Positions 5,105 through 19,752 of a stretch of 64,000 bases of DNA are shown one piece after another; within the stretch, counting starts at the first letter, position 1; every line of letters starts with the position of its first letter. The position numbers were made by a program, and so were the translations under genes. The stretch is taken from the sequence record MT708547.1, one strand, 5' to 3'. A model generated the notes under the pieces. The model was not told the origin of the DNA, did no database searches, and saw only the letters and a program-made list of their open reading frames with translations.

Positions 5105-5307
5105 TGCACAGGAAGCATTGTAAGGCGTTAATCTGTTGCTGGTGGCTGATAGTATAGAGAAGTGTTTTAGATTGATTGTAGGCCGTTGTAGGCGTTTATG
5201 AATAGTAAAGTACTGATATTGTTTAATGATCCCGGTATGTGCAAATTATTTTAATTTTTTTCATATTAGGTATTGACGGATTGTGTCAGTACTGGCATAA
5301 TGTATCA

Positions 5308-5375
5308 CATAGAGCGACGGGCAAGACAAGTAGTCAACCTGTAAGACATACGAAAACCAGGTGACGTTGCACTGA
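5308..5375 (+). ncRNA. Candidate ~70-nt three-way-junction RNA
   Basis: TTGACG-17-CATAAT (5273-5301); GCGACG/CGTTGC enclosing GAC/GTC and ACCTG/CAGGT. Confidence 0.5.
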
Positions 5376-5442
5376 TTCAGTACTGAATAATACATAACAT
5401 CTAAATGTTGACAGTACTGAAAAAATGTAGTATAATGATTCA

Positions 5443-5585
5443 CAGAAAGAAGCAATCCAGTAAGCATGGATTAGTGATAAACGTAGACCGGAATCACGAA
5501 AAACTTTCAAGGAAATACCCTTATATAATAAGGGAAGCGTTAAGCGTAGAACGTAAACGCGAAAGTCCTAGCCTTGAACTGAAAA
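5443..5585 (+). ncRNA. Candidate ~140-nt multibranch RNA
   Basis: TTGACA-17-TATAAT (5408-5436); AATCCA/TGGATT, GTGAT/ATCAC, TTCAAGG/CCTTGAA enclosing CCCTTA/TAAGGG and GCGTT/AACGC. Confidence 0.6.
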
Positions 5586-5708
5586 AGTAAACAAGGTAAT
5601 TTAAGAAAAAAGATTTAAAAAAGTAGTTGACAAGTACTAACGAGAATGAGATAATCTCTCTCGTTGAAACAAACAAACAATCTTAATCAAAACTTAAAGG
5701 TGAATAAA

Positions 5709-6209
5709 ATGGCTAAACTGAATTCTGTTGTTGTTGCTCTGATCGCTGGTGATGTTGCTGCTCTGAATGCTTCTTTCGCGTCGGTATCGATGGAAGATAT
5801 GAAAACTGTTCGCAATAACTTTAACGAGTTTTACTCGAAGTTTAAAGCGGCAAATGAAGCGGCGGAAGCGGCTGCAAAAGAGCGTAAAGCACAGATCGAA
5901 ACCGAAACGAAAGCCCTGGTAGATGCCCTGGTAACTGCTGGCCTGGATCTGGAAATGGCCGCCGAAGTCGCCAGCCAGAAAATGGCGGTTAAATATCCCG
6001 AACTGGCCGCGAAGCCGGAAACTGGTAAATCCTGGTCGTTTGAAACGGTATTCGTTAACCTCGACGGCGAAAAACTGGAAATTGGCACTAAAGGCAACAA
6101 AGGCAGCATGAAAGCACTTAAAGCGGCACGCGACGCAATTGCTGCCGGCGAGTACAAAGATCGTGCTGAATGGATCGCCGCACACGCCTGGACTGAAACC
6201 GAAGCGTAA
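5709..6209 (+). CDS. H-NS/MvaT-like nucleoid-associated protein
   Basis: Ala/Glu coiled coil ending ALVTAGLDLE (H-NS MLIADGIDPNE-like); C-term GEKLEIGTKGNK (MvaT GEVIETKGGN-like); high-expression codons. Confidence 0.5.
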   Translation: MAKLNSVVVALIAGDVAALNASFASVSMEDMKTVRNNFNEFYSKFKAANEAAEAAAKERKAQIETETKALVDALVTAGLDLEMAAEVASQKMAVKYPELAAKPETGKSWSFETVFVNLDGEKLEIGTKGNKGSMKALKAARDAIAAGEYKDRAEWIAAHAWTETEA

Positions 6210-6230
6210 TAATTCAGTCCAGTAATAATT

Positions 6231-6254
6231 AGCCTCCTAATTGGAGGCTTTTTA
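6231..6254 (+). terminator. Rho-independent terminator
   Basis: AGCCTCC-TAATT-GGAGGCT-TTTT. Confidence 0.85.
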
Positions 6255-6344
6255 TTTTTGTTCAAAAAAATATTTTAATTTATTTTTTGAACGGATTTCA
6301 AAAATCAGGTATAATAATAAAGGGTGTTAATTACAAAGACCCCC

Positions 6345-15056: not shown

Positions 15057-15422
15057 ATGGAAAAAGAATTTAAAATCAAATACAATATCAGTACTGATTG
15101 TGGTTTTGAAGTACCAGAAGAAGATCAAGAACGTCTTAATGATGTTATTATGATTGACATTTCAAATAAAATCATTCAAGGCTACCGCGAAGGTGAATTG
15201 TGTGAATCGTTGATGGATCAATTCGATGAAGTGGAAACATTTTATCGTGGCTGGTGGAGCATCGAAGAAGTTCACAAAGTACACGAATACCGTGTATTCT
15301 GGATTAACGGCGTTAATGATATCGAAGATATCATTGTAAAAGAAAGTAGTGAATCCGCCGCCATTCAGTACTTTAAAGATCACTACCCCAACAAACGTTA
15401 TCACCATTTAGAAAAAATTTAA
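15057..15422 (+). CDS. Acidic hypothetical protein
   Basis: AAGGA SD. Confidence 0.85.
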   Translation: MEKEFKIKYNISTDCGFEVPEEDQERLNDVIMIDISNKIIQGYREGELCESLMDQFDEVETFYRGWWSIEEVHKVHEYRVFWINGVNDIEDIIVKESSESAAIQYFKDHYPNKRYHHLEKI

Positions 15423-15485
15423 AAAGTACTTGACACCTAATATCAGTACTGACATAATTACTTTAAACAAACAAGGTATTACAAA

Positions 15486-15872
15486 ATGAAAAAGATTATT
15501 CTGGCTGTTACTCTGATGGTTTCCGCTTCCTCTGTGATGGCTGTTAATCTCAATGAATTAACTGATTTCAGTAATACTATGCGTGATCGTTTCAGTGTAC
15601 CAGATCACATTGCAAAAGCCGAACAAGCTCGCAACGCTGGCATGAAATGCAATGCATTGATGACCGATGAGAAAACGGGTAAACAGTTTAAATCACAATT
15701 CAGTACTGGCCCGGAGGATAAACCGATGGTATCAGGTAACGATCTGACTTATCATGAAGAAGATGATACCGGTAGTACTACACTGGTTATCAATAAAAAT
15801 ACTGGTAAAGGTTTTATTACTATTATGGACGCAAGCCAGGTAATTGCAACTGGTAACGTAATTTGCAAATAA
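15486..15872 (+). CDS. Exported (signal peptide) protein
   Basis: MKKIILAVTLMVSASSVMA; two Cys. Confidence 0.8.
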   Translation: MKKIILAVTLMVSASSVMAVNLNELTDFSNTMRDRFSVPDHIAKAEQARNAGMKCNALMTDEKTGKQFKSQFSTGPEDKPMVSGNDLTYHEEDDTGSTTLVINKNTGKGFITIMDASQVIATGNVICK

Positions 15873-15957
15873 AATACTTGACAACATAATCCAGTACTGA
15901 TATATTAATACGCATAGGGGCAAACAACTTGCCCCACTAAACAAAAGGAACTACCAA

Positions 15958-16314
15958 ATGATTACTAAATTCTACGCTACTCGTGAACTGGCTCGGAACG
16001 TCGCTCGTGAAGAAGGTGAAACCTTCAAAGATATGGGTAAAGATTCCCCTGCTGGTCAACGCTGGGCAGTACTGTTCCGCGAGGTCAAAGACCTGGTAGA
16101 AAACGCTAAAGCCGTTGAAATGAACGTTCCCACCAAAGAAGATAAAGAACTGACTGATGCCCTCGCCGCTGCATTCTCCGCGATGGATAAAGCCGCAGCG
16201 GTAGTACTGAAAGTACCGGAATTTGTTACCAGAAAAGTGCATTCAGTACTACAAAATAAATTCAATGGTAAACAGGTTCAAGTGTTTACTAAACGTAAAA
16301 TTCCGGTCATGTAA
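15958..16314 (+). CDS. Hypothetical protein
   Basis: cassette + SD; followed by terminator. Confidence 0.85.
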   Translation: MITKFYATRELARNVAREEGETFKDMGKDSPAGQRWAVLFREVKDLVENAKAVEMNVPTKEDKELTDALAAAFSAMDKAAAVVLKVPEFVTRKVHSVLQNKFNGKQVQVFTKRKIPVM

Positions 16315-16337
16315 AATCTGACTATTACAGTACTAAC

Positions 16338-16360
16338 AAAGGGGCTTCAATGCCCCTTTA
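16338..16360. terminator. Hairpin terminator
   Basis: AAAGGGGC-TTCAAT-GCCCCTTT. Confidence 0.75.
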
Positions 16361-16422
16361 AACGTCCTGTAAGCCATTCTAAGAGGTTTTACATGAAAAA
16401 GGTACAATTACACAAAGGAGTA

Positions 16423-16641
16423 ATGAAAGTTCATTATAATGCCCCGCAACGCATTATAGATAGATCCATTGAACTAGCCAATCAATACCTAGCTGGTGGA
16501 TTAACTCCCAGGAAGTTAAGCAACGGGAAGTTATATGTAATCAACGTTGATACTAATAATCGTATAGTAATCAAAGGTGAAAGCATATCACTGTATGAAC
16601 ATCAACAGTATAACAAGAAAGTAAAAAATATTAGTAGATAA
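16423..16641 (+). CDS. Possible ParE/RelE-like small toxin-fold protein
   Basis: ..Y..G...PRKL....Y.INV...RIV......L.EH..YN pattern; AAAGGAG SD. Confidence 0.35.
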   Translation: MKVHYNAPQRIIDRSIELANQYLAGGLTPRKLSNGKLYVINVDTNNRIVIKGESISLYEHQQYNKKVKNISR

Positions 16642-16720
16642 GTATTGACAACTGATTTCAGTACTGCCATAATGTATACATACAAGGCAATACCGCCTAA
16701 TAACATAGGAGTAACTGAAA

Positions 16721-17143
16721 ATGAAAAAATCAACTAAAATTGTCTTAGGTGTATTTGTTGTTCCGGCAGTCGCCTTTTTTACTTGTGCTATGATTTTTGG
16801 TGATGCTTCTCGGGTTGCCGCAAAAATCGAAAAAGAAAAACAAGTCCAGGCACAAGTCAAGAAAGAAGAAAAACCAAATTATAACACTGTATGGGAAGCA
16901 ATTTGCCATACCAGTACAGGTAAACGAATTTCCATCCTTACAGCAATGAATAATGGAAAATCAATCGTCGGAAACGAATACATGGAAGTGACTTCCAGTA
17001 CTGGTAAAGAATTCGTAATGACGAACTATAATAACAATAATGTTGCAATTGTTACACAGGATTTTAAAGGTAATGCAGTACTTGAATATCATACGGAATA
17101 TGAAGTAATATTTGCAAAATGCACGTTTGAATGGGGTGCATAA
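16721..17143 (+). CDS. N-terminally membrane-anchored protein
   Basis: hydrophobic IVLGVFVVPAVAFFTCAMIF. Confidence 0.8.
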   Translation: MKKSTKIVLGVFVVPAVAFFTCAMIFGDASRVAAKIEKEKQVQAQVKKEEKPNYNTVWEAICHTSTGKRISILTAMNNGKSIVGNEYMEVTSSTGKEFVMTNYNNNNVAIVTQDFKGNAVLEYHTEYEVIFAKCTFEWGA

Positions 17144-17163
17144 AAATAAAAAAAAATCAAAAA

Positions 17164-17198
17164 GGGGGGTTGACATATGTCAGCCCCTTTGCTATTAT
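17164..17198 (+). promoter_or_regulatory. Terminator/promoter hybrid
   Basis: GGGGTTGAC-ATAT-GTCAGCCCC-TTT containing TTGACA-17-TATTAT. Confidence 0.8.
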
Positions 17199-17203
17199 TA
17201 ATA

Positions 17204-17252
17204 TCAAGAAAACAAGCTAACCCACAGGGTGCATAAATGTATCTATAGTTTA
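17204..17252 (+). ncRNA. Short-RNA family copy L
   Basis: ACCC-ACA-GGGTGC-N6-GTATCTATAGTTT; stem 1 degenerate. Confidence 0.6.
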
Positions 17253-17324
17253 TTAAAGAATTTTAGTACTTGACAACGTAGTACAGTAGTACTAAAATAT
17301 CTACATACAAAGGAGATTACCAAA

Positions 17325-17909
17325 ATGAACAAACATCTTAAAGTACTGAATAAATGTAAATCCAATACCGAAATGTTACTGTACTGTTACAAAAATTTAA
17401 TTAAACTCGGGAGAGGTTCATCCAGGACAGTATTTTTGTTAACAAAAAATAAAGTACTGAAAGTTGCTCATAACCATATTGGCAACCAACAGAATACAGC
17501 AGAAATCACTGCATGGTTGTATATTGATTATGACCGCTATTATAATAAACGTTTTTTCGCTAAAGTGTTCCCTGATATGTCGCATTTCAAAGATGTATAC
17601 ATAGTACAGGAGTACTGCGACAATATCAGTACTAAAGAAGCGAAGCCATATATTGAACATTACAAAGATTCACGTACAATTAAAAATGAAAGGGCTAAAC
17701 GCTTCCACACGGCGTTAAGAGATGTAGATAATACCCTTAACTATAAAACGCTGGTGGACTTAAACATGGGCAATATAGGCCGTTCTGTAAGGGGTGCAAT
17801 CAAAATCCGTGATTATGGTTTGTCTGAACATATTGCTAAACAGTACCGAGAAGCCCGCTTCCAATACCAGAAGCTCAAAAGTATTAGTAAAATAAGTATT
17901 GATTTATAA
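17325..17909 (+). CDS. Minimal Ser/Thr protein kinase-like protein
   Basis: LGRGSSRTVF (Gly loop), VLKVA (Lys), AE (alphaC), YIVQEY (hinge), DLNMGNIG (catalytic D..N), IRDYG (DFG-like). Confidence 0.75.
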   Translation: MNKHLKVLNKCKSNTEMLLYCYKNLIKLGRGSSRTVFLLTKNKVLKVAHNHIGNQQNTAEITAWLYIDYDRYYNKRFFAKVFPDMSHFKDVYIVQEYCDNISTKEAKPYIEHYKDSRTIKNERAKRFHTALRDVDNTLNYKTLVDLNMGNIGRSVRGAIKIRDYGLSEHIAKQYREARFQYQKLKSISKISIDL

Positions 17910-17975
17910 TTTCAGTACTGGTATAGTACTTTCACAGGGGAGATAATCTCCCCAAATCACAAAGGAGATTTTACC

Positions 17976-18338
17976 ATGAGTACTAAACCATTTGTAACCA
18001 CTCGTTCCAATCTGACTGAGATCTATGTACATGGTGGATATGAGGAAACGTATGTCACTGGTATTATGGTAGAATTCCATCAGGGTTATCGGTTTATGTT
18101 GGTAGATTCAGAAATCTATCATACCCAACAAGATAAACATGGTTATGTCAATAAGTACTCCACCGATGAAGTACTGAAACGCCTGGATAATAAAATTAAA
18201 CAAATTCAAAAACATCTTGACAACGGCGGAAAACTTAATCATTTACTTTGGGATAGCTTAGATCCCTGCTACGGTTCGGATGCATATGGTAAAAGCCGTG
18301 ACACTGCAATGAAAGTACTTAAAGATTATTTCTTTTAA
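17976..18338 (+). CDS. Hypothetical protein
   Basis: cassette + SD. Confidence 0.85.
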   Translation: MSTKPFVTTRSNLTEIYVHGGYEETYVTGIMVEFHQGYRFMLVDSEIYHTQQDKHGYVNKYSTDEVLKRLDNKIKQIQKHLDNGGKLNHLLWDSLDPCYGSDAYGKSRDTAMKVLKDYFF

Positions 18339-18429
18339 GTATTGACATAGGTTATCAGTACTGTATAATGTTTTGCATACACAAGAGATTCCAGTGCTGG
18401 AATCTCTAATCTAAAGGAGAATACCGAAA

Positions 18430-18711
18430 ATGATTACTGGTCACATTACTAACTATGCAAAACGCCGCGATGTAGAAATCGAAGTACTGAAAGCTGGCGA
18501 AGTTGACGATGACGCCCAGGTATGGTTCTACACCGCAGACAATGATTGTGAACCAGTACTGATGTACCTGATTAATAATGATGGTTCTCTTACTTATCGT
18601 AGCAAACTGATGAAGTCACTGGAAGATATGCCAGCACATATCAATAATAAAGAAGTACTGAAACGCGTAATCTGCTACATCTCAGACCAGCACAAAGCGG
18701 ATATGATGTAA
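18430..18711 (+). CDS. Hypothetical protein
   Basis: cassette + SD. Confidence 0.85.
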   Translation: MITGHITNYAKRRDVEIEVLKAGEVDDDAQVWFYTADNDCEPVLMYLINNDGSLTYRSKLMKSLEDMPAHINNKEVLKRVICYISDQHKADMM

Positions 18712-18724
18712 TCTTTACAAATAT

Positions 18725-18758
18725 GGGGGTTGACTAATGTCAGCCCTTTTGGTATTAT
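18725..18758 (+). promoter_or_regulatory. Terminator/promoter hybrid
   Basis: GGGGTTGAC-TAAT-GTCAGCCC-TTTT containing TTGACT-17-TATTAT. Confidence 0.8.
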
Positions 18759-18763
18759 ATATT

Positions 18764-18815
18764 CAATCCAGCGAAATGGTCTAACCCTCAAGGGTGCCGA
18801 TATGTATCTATAATT
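18764..18815 (+). ncRNA. Short-RNA family copy M
   Basis: CCA-GCGAAA-TGG; ACCC-TCAA-GGGTGC-N6-GTATCTA. Confidence 0.65.
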
Positions 18816-18961
18816 TAATGATTTGAAGTACTGAAAAATAATTATAAAAAGTACTTGTATTTGTGATTCAGTACTGCCATAATATATCCATACAAGGGAA
18901 ACACATTGTTTCCCGATAATCCACAGCAATAGTGCTGGTGGATGAACCAGGAGTAATAACC

Positions 18962-19258
18962 ATGCAAGACAAATCAATTCATGTTCAAGTAGTTTCAAGC
19001 CGTGGCTATGATGATGTAGTACTGGATATCATGGTTAAAGATCTGCGGGACTATGCAACCATTGCACGTCATATCATGGTTAACTCCATTTGTATCAGTA
19101 CTGGTGCAGACCTGGAAGCTAACCGCTTACATATAGAGGAACATCTATACAAAGCACGTATGAATGATAGCAGTGTATTCATCATTGAAGGTGCTGAGGG
19201 TAAAGAGTATACCGTATACCTTCGCCAGTACCTGGAAGCAGAAAAAGAAGAAGATTAA
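18962..19258 (+). CDS. Hypothetical protein
   Basis: AGGAG SD. Confidence 0.85.
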   Translation: MQDKSIHVQVVSSRGYDDVVLDIMVKDLRDYATIARHIMVNSICISTGADLEANRLHIEEHLYKARMNDSSVFIIEGAEGKEYTVYLRQYLEAEKEED

Positions 19259-19353
19259 TTTATAAAAAGTACTTGCTTTAATAGTTCAGTACTGTATACT
19301 GTTTATCAAGGGGAAGCATAGGGCTTTCCCGTTACACTCAAAGGAGATACACC

Positions 19354-19752
19354 ATGTTTACTATCACTTCTCGCCAGGATGTTCTGTACGTTGCTAAAAC
19401 TTTTGGTCTGGAAGCACTCGATCATATCATTCGCAACAGTACAATGAATGCTGATGCAAATGGGATTATCATTGATACTCGGGCATGGGCCGCCAATGAA
19501 GTCATTGCCATCGAGCATGTTAACGATGGTAACAATGTCTATGAAGTGGATGCATGTTTCAATGCTGTTAATGTAGCAGGTATGTATATCACTGGCATTG
19601 ATGATATTACTATCATCCGTTCGGGTATGGGTAACTTCTCCATGCCTTTACGTTCAGCAATGGAAAGTAAAGAGATCAGTACAGAACAATGTGCAAATTT
19701 AATCAATGAGATTACCGCACGTAATGAAGCTGCTGCTATCCTTTACCCGTAG
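19354..19752 (+). CDS. Hypothetical protein
   Basis: cassette + SD. Confidence 0.85.
   Translation: MFTITSRQDVLYVAKTFGLEALDHIIRNSTMNADANGIIIDTRAWAANEVIAIEHVNDGNNVYEVDACFNAVNVAGMYITGIDDITIIRSGMGNFSMPLRSAMESKEISTEQCANLINEITARNEAAAILYP

What the first reader, a model, noticed from the sequence alone, without database searches (positions are those of the whole stretch)
5627..6254. H-NS/MvaT-like protein with a palindrome over its own -10
Seen: an N-terminal Ala/Glu helix ending ALVTAGLDLE and C-terminal GEKLEIGTKGNK, resembling the H-NS oligomerisation helix and the MvaT DNA-binding loop. It has strongly optimised codons, its own terminator, and promoter TTGACA-17-GATAAT inside the inverted repeat AACGAGA..TCTCGTT. 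Established: H-NS silences AT-rich foreign DNA, and truncated or alternative H-NS proteins act as antagonists. Inference: an anti-silencing or phage-nucleoid protein protecting the very AT-rich 20-54 kb arrays, possibly autoregulated and a candidate AGTACT binder.
Basis: partly seen in the sequence, partly recalled or inferred. Interest (0 to 1): 0.65.

Follow-up and report, generated by a model that had tools for sequence, protein, structure and literature searches.

The report
Giant-phage copy of bacterial H-NS protein
This early gene of a giant Klebsiella phage encodes a very distant relative of H-NS, the bacterial protein that coats and silences AT-rich foreign DNA; it carries signals for very high expression, and all related giant phages examined have one copy, so the phage probably uses it to control how its own AT-rich genome is coated.

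Summary
The window is Klebsiella jumbo phage Muenster (MT708547.1), bases 1-64000. The gene at 5709-6209 (166 aa) lies in the 20-kb terminal repeat.

The ORF, the motifs, the TTGACA-17-GATAAT promoter with TG, the 7-bp inverted repeat, the terminator and the codon optimisation (CAI 0.61, second of 119 ORFs) are all present.

H-NS kinship is supported:
- Pfam Histone_HNS_N scores just above its cut-off.
- After I widened the phage family to 9 diverse members, a profile comparison with H-NS/StpA gave 92% probability and P 6e-7. It is co-linear from dimerisation site 2 (GLDL vs GIDP) through the whole C-terminal domain.
- An invariant Gly-Asn lies where H-NS has the Gly-Arg of QGR. This is the MvaT solution.

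Differences from H-NS: no basic linker, an acidic C-terminal half, no Pfam PF00816 hit and no fold-search hit.

Each RaK2-like jumbo phage genome searched holds one family member (three of three). GenBank already notes an HHpred hit to StpA. I found no paper on it.

The palindrome is weak evidence: about 4% chance, and not conserved in relatives. AGTACT is part of the early promoter design, not a demonstrated target of this protein. Nearby scan notes did not change this reading.

The parts
5603..5626 (+). A-rich UP-element-like tract ending in AAAGTAG just upstream of the -35
   Evidence: Read directly. The block TTTAAAAAAGTAGTTGACA recurs in front of the homologues in L004, L006 and L008.
5627..5655 (+). 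Sigma-70 promoter: TTGACA, 17-nt spacer, TG-n-GATAAT (extended -10)
   Evidence: 11 of 12 matches, TG present. The -35 and TGAGATAAT are invariant in 7 relatives.
5633..5638 (.). AGTACT palindrome abutting the -35 hexamer
   Evidence: It is not conserved at this place in L008, L004 or L006.
5639..5665 (.). Inverted repeat AACGAGA / TCTCGTT bracketing the -10 and the expected +1
   Evidence: Chance expectation is about 4%. It is broken in phiKp_21 and largely lost in L008.
5662..5708 (+). Predicted A/C-rich 5' leader (GAAACAAACAAAC...) with Shine-Dalgarno AAAGGTGA at 5696-5703
   Evidence: Read directly. The leader is nearly the same in L007 and L008, although the L007 protein is only about 34% identical. 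The start at 5662 is inferred from the -10, not measured.
5709..6209 (+). CDS CPT_Muenster_011, 166 aa, divergent H-NS-family protein
5709..5996 (+). N-terminal helical oligomerisation-type domain (residues 1-96): two short helices, one long helix 28-76, a turn, then helix 81-95
   Evidence: AlphaFold2 model, pLDDT 79. Pfam PF22470 covers residues 15-70. hhalign aligns it to H-NS 45-83.
5940..5951 (+). G78-L79-D80-L81 turn; G78, D80 and L81 are invariant in the family and L79 varies only to F
   Evidence: Aligned to G69-I70-D71-P72 of H-NS dimerisation site 2.
6042..6188 (+). C-terminal domain (about residues 112-160): beta-hairpin, loop, helix, short helix
   Evidence: Models. Aligned co-linearly to the H-NS DNA-binding domain. 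C-terminal halves alone give P 6e-4.
6093..6098 (+). Invariant Gly129-Asn130 in the loop after the hairpin
   Evidence: Invariant in 9 diverse family members. Aligned to G113-R114 of the H-NS QGR motif.
6231..6259 (+). Intrinsic terminator (7-bp GC-rich stem, 5-nt loop, T run)
   Evidence: and annotated in GenBank. Each homologue has a terminator of its own.

Best explanation
The gene encodes a phage-made, highly divergent member of the H-NS family of nucleoid-associated proteins.

Shown here:
- It has the H-NS layout: two short helices, one long helix, a G-x-D-L turn plus helix equivalent to H-NS dimerisation site 2, a linker, and a small hairpin-loop-helix domain.
- It is homologous to H-NS/StpA from site 2 to the C-terminus.
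- The loop that carries Q-G-R in H-NS carries an invariant G-N, preceded by K or R in 5 of the 9 aligned family members.
- The gene is a self-contained unit: UP-like A tract, consensus -35, extended -10, unstructured A/C-rich leader, strong Shine-Dalgarno, host-optimal codons and its own terminator.
- It lies in the terminal repeat, which carries host-type promoters.
- All three RaK2-like jumbo phage genomes searched hold one copy.

Inferred:
- It is made in bulk by host RNA polymerase right after DNA entry.
- It oligomerises through its N-terminal domain.
- It competes or co-polymerises with host H-NS on the 32% GC phage genome, so that the phage rather than the host decides how that DNA is coated and transcribed.
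- Because it lacks the basic linker and has an acidic C-terminal half, its filaments are expected to bind DNA more weakly or differently from H-NS. That would favour counter-silencing over silencing.
For: Identity and position:
- Klebsiella phage Muenster, terminal repeat 1-20030, deposited as 'putative DNA-binding protein' with an HHpred hit to NP_417155.1, which is StpA.

Homology to H-NS:
- Pfam Histone_HNS_N scores 25.5 bits against a cut-off of 24.5.
- hhalign of the narrow family gives P 6.8e-4. With 9 diverse members it rises to 92% probability, P 6.3e-7, 91 columns, H-NS 45-136.
- 0 of 120 within-domain shuffles reach the observed score. The signal persists without the Klebsiella-phage rows. 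C-terminal halves alone give P 6e-4.
- AlphaFold2 topology matches the H-NS domain order.
- G78, D80, L81, K95, G129 and N130 are invariant.

Expression signals and distribution:
- Promoter, terminator, CAI and leader.
- Distribution: 45 to 67 jumbo-phage records, one copy in each of the three genomes searched.

Biological context:
- The phage is 31.9% GC and its host about 57.7% (PMC8407769).
- Other phages carry anti-H-NS proteins gp5.5, Arn, MotB and Mip (PMC8501957).
Against: - No PF00816 hit in the protein or in the RaK2 genome.
- Foldseek and VIA-align searches of the whole model and of the C-terminal domain find no H-NS, Ler or MvaT structure. The best C-domain matches are ribbon-helix-helix proteins at Z 2-3.2.
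- HMM searches against PDB sequences find no H-NS.
- The Pfam N-terminal hit passes only in the Klebsiella-phage subgroup (5 of 8 members) and rests partly on an Ala/Glu-rich coil.
- The C-terminal half is acidic (net -2 to -4, pI about 5), against +4 and +6 in H-NS and StpA. The MvaT-like lysines are not conserved in the family.
- No expression, DNA-binding or H-NS-binding data exist. RNA-library contigs cover only 5549-5791, which includes the promoter itself, so they prove nothing.
Confidence: 0.55

Rival explanations
1. It is a pure protein-level H-NS poison. It keeps an H-NS-compatible dimerisation site 2 and caps or disrupts host H-NS filaments, in effect like T7 gp5.5 or truncated H-NST. 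Its C-terminal domain no longer binds DNA and serves another partner.
For: - The region best aligned to H-NS starts at site 2 (GLDL against GIDP).
- The basic linker is missing and the C-terminal half is acidic in every lineage.
- gp5.5 acts on H-NS site 2 (PMC8501957).
- Very high expression would suit stoichiometric titration of an abundant host protein.
Against: - The C-terminal domain is conserved across the whole family, with an invariant G-N exactly at the DNA-reading loop position. A poison would not need it: the review read (PMC7074111) lists H-NST as similar to the H-NS N-terminal part only.
- The residues aligned to H-NS Y61 and M64 are E66 and A69 in this phage.
- No interaction prediction could be run.
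Confidence: 0.2
2. It is a sequence-specific repressor that shuts off its own promoter through the AACGAGA/TCTCGTT palindrome, and perhaps the AGTACT-bearing early promoters. It would then be the early-to-middle switch.
For: - The inverted repeat brackets the -10 and the expected +1.
- AGTACT abuts the -35 here and is embedded twice, 20 bp apart, in 21 early promoters.
- Each lineage has some short inverted repeat in the promoter spacer.
Against: - The palindrome has about a 4% chance expectation, carries a mismatch in phiKp_21, and is nearly lost in L008 although the promoter is invariant there.
- The repeats in other lineages differ in sequence and place.
- H-NS-type loops read minor-groove shape, not GC-containing palindromes (PMC4466236).
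- The AGTACT at this promoter is not conserved.
Confidence: 0.1
3. It is not an H-NS relative. It is a coiled-coil protein with an unrelated small domain, for example one like a ribbon-helix-helix, and has some other early function. The H-NS signals would then be compositional.
For: - The fold searches give only ribbon-helix-helix proteins at Z 2-3.2.
- There is a weak TacA1 (ribbon-helix-helix antitoxin) Pfam hit in the phage 7t3 homologue.
- The Pfam H-NS_N hit is marginal and specific to one subgroup.
- The best PDB sequence hit is the ApeA Mid domain, E 0.01.
Against: - The profile-profile score rose from P 7e-4 to 6e-7 when divergent members were added. It survives removal of the Ala/Glu-rich Klebsiella-phage rows. 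It is not reached by 120 composition-preserving shuffles. It is co-linear over two domains.
- The depositors' independent HHpred run gave 97.2% to StpA.
Confidence: 0.12

Closest known systems
H-NS / StpA of Enterobacterales (Pfam PF22470 + PF00816)
   Same: - Two-domain layout with a helical N-terminal oligomerisation part, a G-x-D turn at dimerisation site 2, a linker, and a hairpin-loop-helix C-terminal domain.
- Co-linear profile alignment to H-NS 45-136.
- Acidic overall pI, and codon usage typical of highly expressed host genes.
   Different: - 166 aa against 137 aa.
- No detectable pairwise similarity.
- No PF00816 hit.
- K-G-N in place of Q-G-R.
- No basic linker, and an acidic rather than basic C-terminal half.
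- Encoded by a lytic jumbo phage.
MvaT/MvaU of Pseudomonas (AT-pincer DNA-binding domain)
   Same: - Gly-Asn in the loop after the hairpin, at the position of the last two residues of QGR.
- In the Klebsiella-phage version, lysines stand at +5 and +8 from the Asn, as K105 and K108 do in MvaT (PMC4466236).
   Different: - The lysine network is not conserved in the rest of the phage family.
- An Arg80 equivalent is uncertain.
- No MvaT sequence was at hand, so homology to MvaT itself was not tested.
- The hosts are enterobacteria, which use H-NS and not MvaT.
Horizontally acquired H-NS homologues (Sfh of R27, Acr2, Hfp/H-NSB, H-NS of phage EPV1, actinophage Lsr2/CgpS)
   Same: A mobile element brings its own copy of the host's xenogeneic silencer family (PMC7074111; PMC3097231).
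   Different: - The review lists those as full-length homologues of the host silencer. This one is only detectable by profile methods.
- E. coli H-NS finds no true phage record among 50,697.
- This gene sits in a strictly lytic jumbo phage, in the early terminal repeat.
Phage anti-H-NS proteins: T7 gp5.5, T4 Arn and MotB, LUZ24 Mip (gp4)
   Same: An early phage protein aimed at the host silencer of AT-rich DNA (PMC8501957). This is the likely biological purpose.
   Different: As described in PMC8501957 they work in other ways: gp5.5 binds H-NS site 2, Arn is a DNA mimic, MotB is a non-specific DNA binder, and Mip (gp4) relieves MvaT repression. This protein would work as a family member, by competition or co-polymerisation.

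Membership tests
H-NS family | N-terminal H-NS oligomerisation domain (Pfam PF22470 Histone_HNS_N) | tested here: met
   25.5 bits against a gathering score of 24.5, residues 15-70. Caveat: it passes only in 5 of 8 narrow-family members and in none of 4 longer homologues, and part of the score comes from an Ala/Glu coil.
H-NS family | Central dimerisation site 2 (end of the long helix, turn, short helix) | tested here: met
   hhalign aligns the family to H-NS 45-83, with G78, D80 and L81 invariant and GLDL placed on GIDP. AlphaFold2 predicts helix 28-76, a turn, and helix 81-95. Whether it dimerises was not tested.
H-NS family | C-terminal DNA-binding domain recognised by Pfam PF00816 | tested here: not met
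   No hit in the protein at E up to 10. No hit in the six-frame search of the nearest genome, RaK2.
H-NS family | C-terminal domain homologous to the H-NS domain by profile comparison | tested here: met
   The whole-protein hhalign (92%, P 6.3e-7) runs through H-NS 91-136. C-terminal halves alone give P 6e-4, and 0 of 120 shuffles of the whole-protein comparison reach its score.
H-NS family | AT-hook-like Q/R-G-R motif in the loop | tested here: not met
   The loop is T-K-G-N-K-G here. The family consensus is [KRTNS]-G-N, with G-N invariant.
H-NS family | Basic linker and basic C-terminal half | tested here: not met
   Net charge of the C-terminal half is -2 (pI 5.3) here and -2 to -4 in relatives, against +4 in H-NS and +6 in StpA.
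H-NS family | Three-dimensional match of the C-terminal domain to solved H-NS, Ler or Bv3F domains | tested here: inconclusive
   The secondary-structure order matches. No H-NS-family chain appears in Foldseek or VIA-align lists. The domain is small, the model pLDDT is 75, and the aligner misses many pairs at low Z.
H-NS family | Binding to AT-rich DNA and formation of filaments or bridges | not testable with these tools
   Needs EMSA, footprinting or bridging assays.
MvaT family | Gly-Asn of loop 2 inserted in the minor groove (half of the AT-pincer) | tested here: met
   Invariant G129-N130 is aligned to G113-R114 of H-NS. The paper equates MvaT N100 with that Arg. This is positional equivalence only.
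MvaT family | Arg80 arm and lysine network (K81, K83, K97, K102, K105, K108) | tested here: inconclusive
   K128, K131, K135 and K138 are present in Muenster but not conserved across the family. A basic residue followed by W or Y precedes strand 1 in the five shorter members of the alignment.
MvaT family | Sequence homology to MvaT itself | not tested
Truncated H-NS antagonists (H-NST type) | N-terminal domain only, no C-terminal domain | tested here: not met
   A conserved C-terminal domain is present in all lineages.
Ribbon-helix-helix DNA binders | Strand-helix-helix fold with significant structural or sequence match | tested here: inconclusive
   Only Z 2-3.2 to ParD2, PrpA and NikR, plus a sub-threshold TacA1 hit in one homologue. 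The model has an intramolecular hairpin, not a single strand.

The most novel reading that the evidence does not exclude
RaK2-like jumbo phages carry a 'decoy H-NS'. It would be an abundant early family member that keeps H-NS dimerisation site 2 and a G-N minor-groove loop but has lost the basic linker. It would co-polymerise with host H-NS or StpA on the AT-rich phage genome and turn silencing filaments into harmless ones. That would be counter-silencing by a full-length, charge-inverted paralogue, a mechanism not described for lytic phages.
Probability: 0.25. Interest if true: 0.65.

Novelty: new variant of a known kind. Interest (0 to 1): 0.47.

Why it matters
H-NS silencing of AT-rich DNA is a general barrier to foreign DNA in enterobacteria. 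Known lytic-phage answers (gp5.5, Arn, MotB, Mip) are unrelated inhibitors.

Here a whole clade of 350-kb phages with about 32% GC, infecting Klebsiella, Escherichia, Salmonella, Erwinia, Yersinia, Serratia, Pectobacterium and Cronobacter, keeps its own deeply diverged H-NS-family gene under very strong expression signals in the terminal repeat, the region with host-type promoters.

If it competes or co-assembles with host H-NS, it is a new route to counter-silencing. It is also a natural experiment on what the linker charge and the QGR-versus-GN loop do.

It is of practical interest as well, because these phages are candidates for therapy against carbapenem-resistant Klebsiella.

Tried and rejected
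- BLASTP against E. coli H-NS and StpA found nothing.
- phmmer and hmmsearch against PDB sequences found no H-NS. The best hit was the ApeA Mid domain at E 0.01, left unexplained.
- Foldseek PDB, VIA-align wide and VIA second look, on the whole model and on the C-terminal model, found no H-NS-family hit.
- BFVD returned only family members. The ESM Atlas was uninformative.
- NCBIfam gave nothing. PHROGs gave only families of unknown function.
- The word search with an H-NS profile, meant to widen the H-NS side, returned only close orthologues and added no diversity.
- The viral-contig scan found only RaK2.
- RNA-library contigs cover only 5549-5791, including the promoter, so they are no evidence of transcription.
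- The phAPEC6 homologue gp528 is not mentioned in the main text of the virion-proteome paper. The supplements were not checked.
- Muenster gp006 (203 aa) was checked as a possible paralogue and is unrelated.
- Rejected: the palindrome as a conserved operator.
- Rejected: AGTACT as a site specific to this gene.

Full report
**Where we are.**
The 1.2 kb around the finding is 100% identical to Klebsiella phage Muenster MT708547.1 at the same coordinates, so the window is bases 1-64000 of that 346,937-bp Alcyoneusvirus (RaK2-like) jumbo phage. The gene is CPT_Muenster_011 (5709-6209, + strand, 166 aa). NP_417155.1 is E. coli StpA, the H-NS paralogue. The RefSeq record of K64-1 calls the orthologue 'DNA-binding protein'. 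The genome announcement does not mention it (PMC8407769). No paper in the searchable library combines H-NS with RaK2, 121Q, PBECO4, K64-1 or Alcyoneusvirus.

**Observation.**
All the sequence features are real.
- The ORF and both peptide motifs are present.
- The promoter is TTGACA (5627-5632), 17 nt, GATAAT (5650-5655), with TG two bases upstream as an extended -10.
- The inverted repeat is AACGAGA 5639-5645 and TCTCGTT 5659-5665.
- AGTACT lies at 5633-5638.
- A clean intrinsic terminator lies at 6231-6259.
- Codon adaptation, scored against 23 E. coli ribosomal-protein genes, is 0.61. That is second of 119 ORFs of 70 aa or more in the window (mean 0.35, z 3.1). It is close to E. coli hns (0.67) and stpA (0.57). 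The gene is 50% GC in a 35% GC neighbourhood.
- Homologues in three other lineages also have high CAI (0.53-0.68), their own promoter with the same AAAGTAGTTGACA-type upstream block, and their own terminator.
- The A/C-rich leader (GAAACAAACAAAC...TTAATCAAAC...AAAGGTGA) is almost unchanged in front of a homologue whose protein is only about 34% identical (L007).

The gene is therefore a conserved, monocistronic unit built for very high expression from a host-type promoter.

**The palindrome.**
It sits in operator-like geometry, with the left arm in the spacer and the right arm over the expected +1. The statistics are weak. About 4% of all positions in the window are bracketed by a perfect 7-bp inverted repeat with a spacer of 25 nt or less. 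Among seven relatives the -35 and TGAGATAAT are invariant. The right arm has a mismatch in phiKp_21. In the relative with 78% protein identity (L008) only a shifted GACG/CGTC remains. More distant lineages have other short repeats at other places in the spacer. I treat it as unproven and probably chance.

**AGTACT.**
The hexamer occurs 272 times in the window against 15 expected, mostly in the terminal repeat. Twenty-one successive pairs are exactly 20 bp apart, and all have the form AGTAC-TTGACA-N9-CAGTAC-TG-TATAAT. The motif is therefore part of the early promoter architecture. The copy next to this gene's -35 is not conserved in L008, L004 or L006. Nothing links it to this protein.

**Is it an H-NS relative?**
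Direct comparisons fail:
- BLASTP to H-NS and StpA.
- phmmer and hmmsearch to PDB sequences.
- PF00816, both in the protein and in the RaK2 genome.

Pfam Histone_HNS_N does hit, just above its cut-off (25.5 against 24.5 bits, residues 15-70). It passes only in the Klebsiella-phage subgroup.

The family is tiny in sequence space, with 6 hits among 1.84 billion cluster representatives. tblastn shows it in 45 phage records with the Muenster protein as query, and in 46 and 67 records with two metagenomic relatives as queries. All hits examined are jumbo phages of about 350 kb, infecting Klebsiella, Escherichia, Salmonella, Erwinia, Yersinia, Serratia, Pectobacterium and Cronobacter. In the Erwinia, Yersinia and Salmonella phages examined the protein is 195-220 aa, with a longer coil. 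A profile search finds exactly one copy in each of three genomes tested. In records that include both terminal repeats it appears twice, a few kb from the end.

The decisive test was profile against profile.
- The narrow family (8 rows) against an H-NS/StpA profile gave a co-linear 89-column alignment with P 6.8e-4.
- With four longer, divergent members added (A7, 9 rows), the same comparison rose to 92% probability, P 6.3e-7 and 91 columns, covering H-NS residues 45-136.
- In my own runs, 0 of 120 within-domain column shuffles reached the observed score (34 against 12.5 +/- 2.2).
- The C-terminal halves alone gave P 6e-4.

A signal that grows with family diversity and does not depend on the Ala/Glu-rich rows is what homology predicts and what compositional bias does not. 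The alignment makes these pairings:
- the GLDL turn with G69-I70-D71-P72 of dimerisation site 2;
- the basic-aromatic start of strand 1 with K96-Y97;
- the D-G-E-K hairpin turn with N-G-E-T;
- the invariant G129-N130 with G113-R114 of QGR;
- G147 with G127;
- the final [FW]-I with F133-L134.

AlphaFold2 models (pLDDT 79 and 75) give the matching order of elements. They show two short helices, a long helix 28-76, a turn and helix 81-95. After a disordered linker come a hairpin at 113-126, the T-K-G-N-K-G-S loop, and helices 134-145 and 152-158.

**What does not fit.**
- Fold searches never return an H-NS-family structure. The long helix dominates the whole-model lists. The isolated C-terminal model gives only ribbon-helix-helix proteins at Z 2-3.2. 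For a domain of about 50 residues modelled from five sequences this is inconclusive, but it is not support.
- The loop is K-G-N, not Q/R-G-R.
- The half of the protein after the N-terminal domain is acidic in every lineage (net -2 to -4, pI 4.7-5.3). The same half is strongly basic in H-NS and StpA (+4 and +6, pI 9.6-10.2).
- The lysines that mimic MvaT K105 and K108 in the Muenster protein are not conserved in the family.

**Comparison with MvaT.**
In the MvaT-DNA structure, only Gly99 and Asn100 of loop 2 enter the minor groove. Asn100 takes the conformation of the last Arg of QGR, and N100A is among the most damaging mutations (PMC4466236). An invariant G-N at that very alignment position, preceded by K or R in 5 of 9 family members, is the strongest hint that the C-terminal domain still reads the AT-rich minor groove. 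I had no MvaT sequence from a tool, so homology to MvaT itself is untested. The resemblance could be convergent within the H-NS fold.

**Mechanism.**
Shown:
- Family membership at the level of remote homology.
- Strong, conserved expression signals.
- Position in the terminal repeat, which carries host-type promoters.
- A single conserved copy in each of the three genomes of the clade that were searched.

Inferred:
- The protein is made in bulk immediately after infection and oligomerises.
- It binds AT-rich DNA through the G-N loop.
- It competes or co-polymerises with host H-NS on a 31.9% GC genome inside a 57.7% GC host (PMC8407769).

The missing basic linker and the acidic C-terminal half argue that it is not a plain silencer. 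They make a counter-silencing or 'replacement coat' role the most likely one. Other phages reach this end with unrelated proteins: gp5.5 on H-NS site 2, Arn, MotB and Mip (PMC8501957). A pure protein-level poison is possible but does not explain the conserved C-terminal domain.

**Novelty.**
A 2020 review lists only two kinds of phage-encoded silencer homologues: H-NS of the metagenomic phage EPV1, and the Lsr2/CgpS proteins of actinophages and a prophage (PMC7074111; PMC3097231). E. coli H-NS finds no genuine phage record among 50,697. A conserved, profile-only H-NS relative with a G-N loop and inverted charge, in lytic enterobacterial jumbo phages, is a new variant of a known kind. The bare H-NS/StpA resemblance is already in the GenBank note, so it is not a discovery from nothing.

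**Other notes from this scan.**
Notes on the same window describe promoter-driven short RNAs in the terminal repeat, and two just upstream of this gene. They agree with the promoters I saw at 5273 and 5408. They did not change the reading.

Noticed in passing
window 1-20030 (examples 1458/1478, 2951/2971, 9697/9717, 12865/12885): AGTACT occurs 272 times against 15 expected. Twenty-one pairs are exactly 20 bp apart and all form the early promoter AGTAC-TTGACA-N9-CAGTAC-TG-TATAAT. The same design stands in a metagenomic relative (L006). The palindromic hexamer on both promoter elements might be a site for a dimeric regulator or a promoter-strength element.
   Followed up: partly
window 5662-5708; L007 1-39; L008 about 815-859: The A/C-rich leader (CAAACAAACAAAC...TTAATCAAAC...AAAGGTGA) is nearly identical between lineages whose proteins share only about 34% identity. 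This suggests selection on the untranslated leader itself, as a translation enhancer or regulatory site.
   Followed up: partly
protein residues about 68-160 (window 5910-6188) against PDB 9hxd chain A, residues 248-338: The family profile's best hit in PDB sequences is the Mid domain and regulatory-loop region of the antiphage HEPN protein Ec2ApeA. The E-value is 0.01 (0.8 with the narrower profile), and the match is co-linear over about 88 positions, including W-S-x-E-x-x-V-V-x-x-N-G-E-K-I. It may be chance. No structural hit backs it.
   Followed up: partly
window 15057-19752: A run of small terminal-repeat genes has unusually high host-type codon adaptation: 18430-18711 CAI 0.64, 15958-16314 CAI 0.58, 15486-15872 CAI 0.57, 15057-15422 CAI 0.56, 18962-19258 CAI 0.55.
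   Followed up: no
window 5273-5585: Two consensus promoters (5273 and 5408, the second a perfect 12 of 12) point at a stretch with no convincing + strand ORF. The 58-aa 'membrane protein' annotated on the minus strand (5334-5510) overlaps them and may be spurious.
   Followed up: no
window 20000-64000: GC content drops from about 35% in the terminal repeat to 25-31% beyond 20 kb. AGTACT density falls about four-fold at the same boundary.
   Followed up: no
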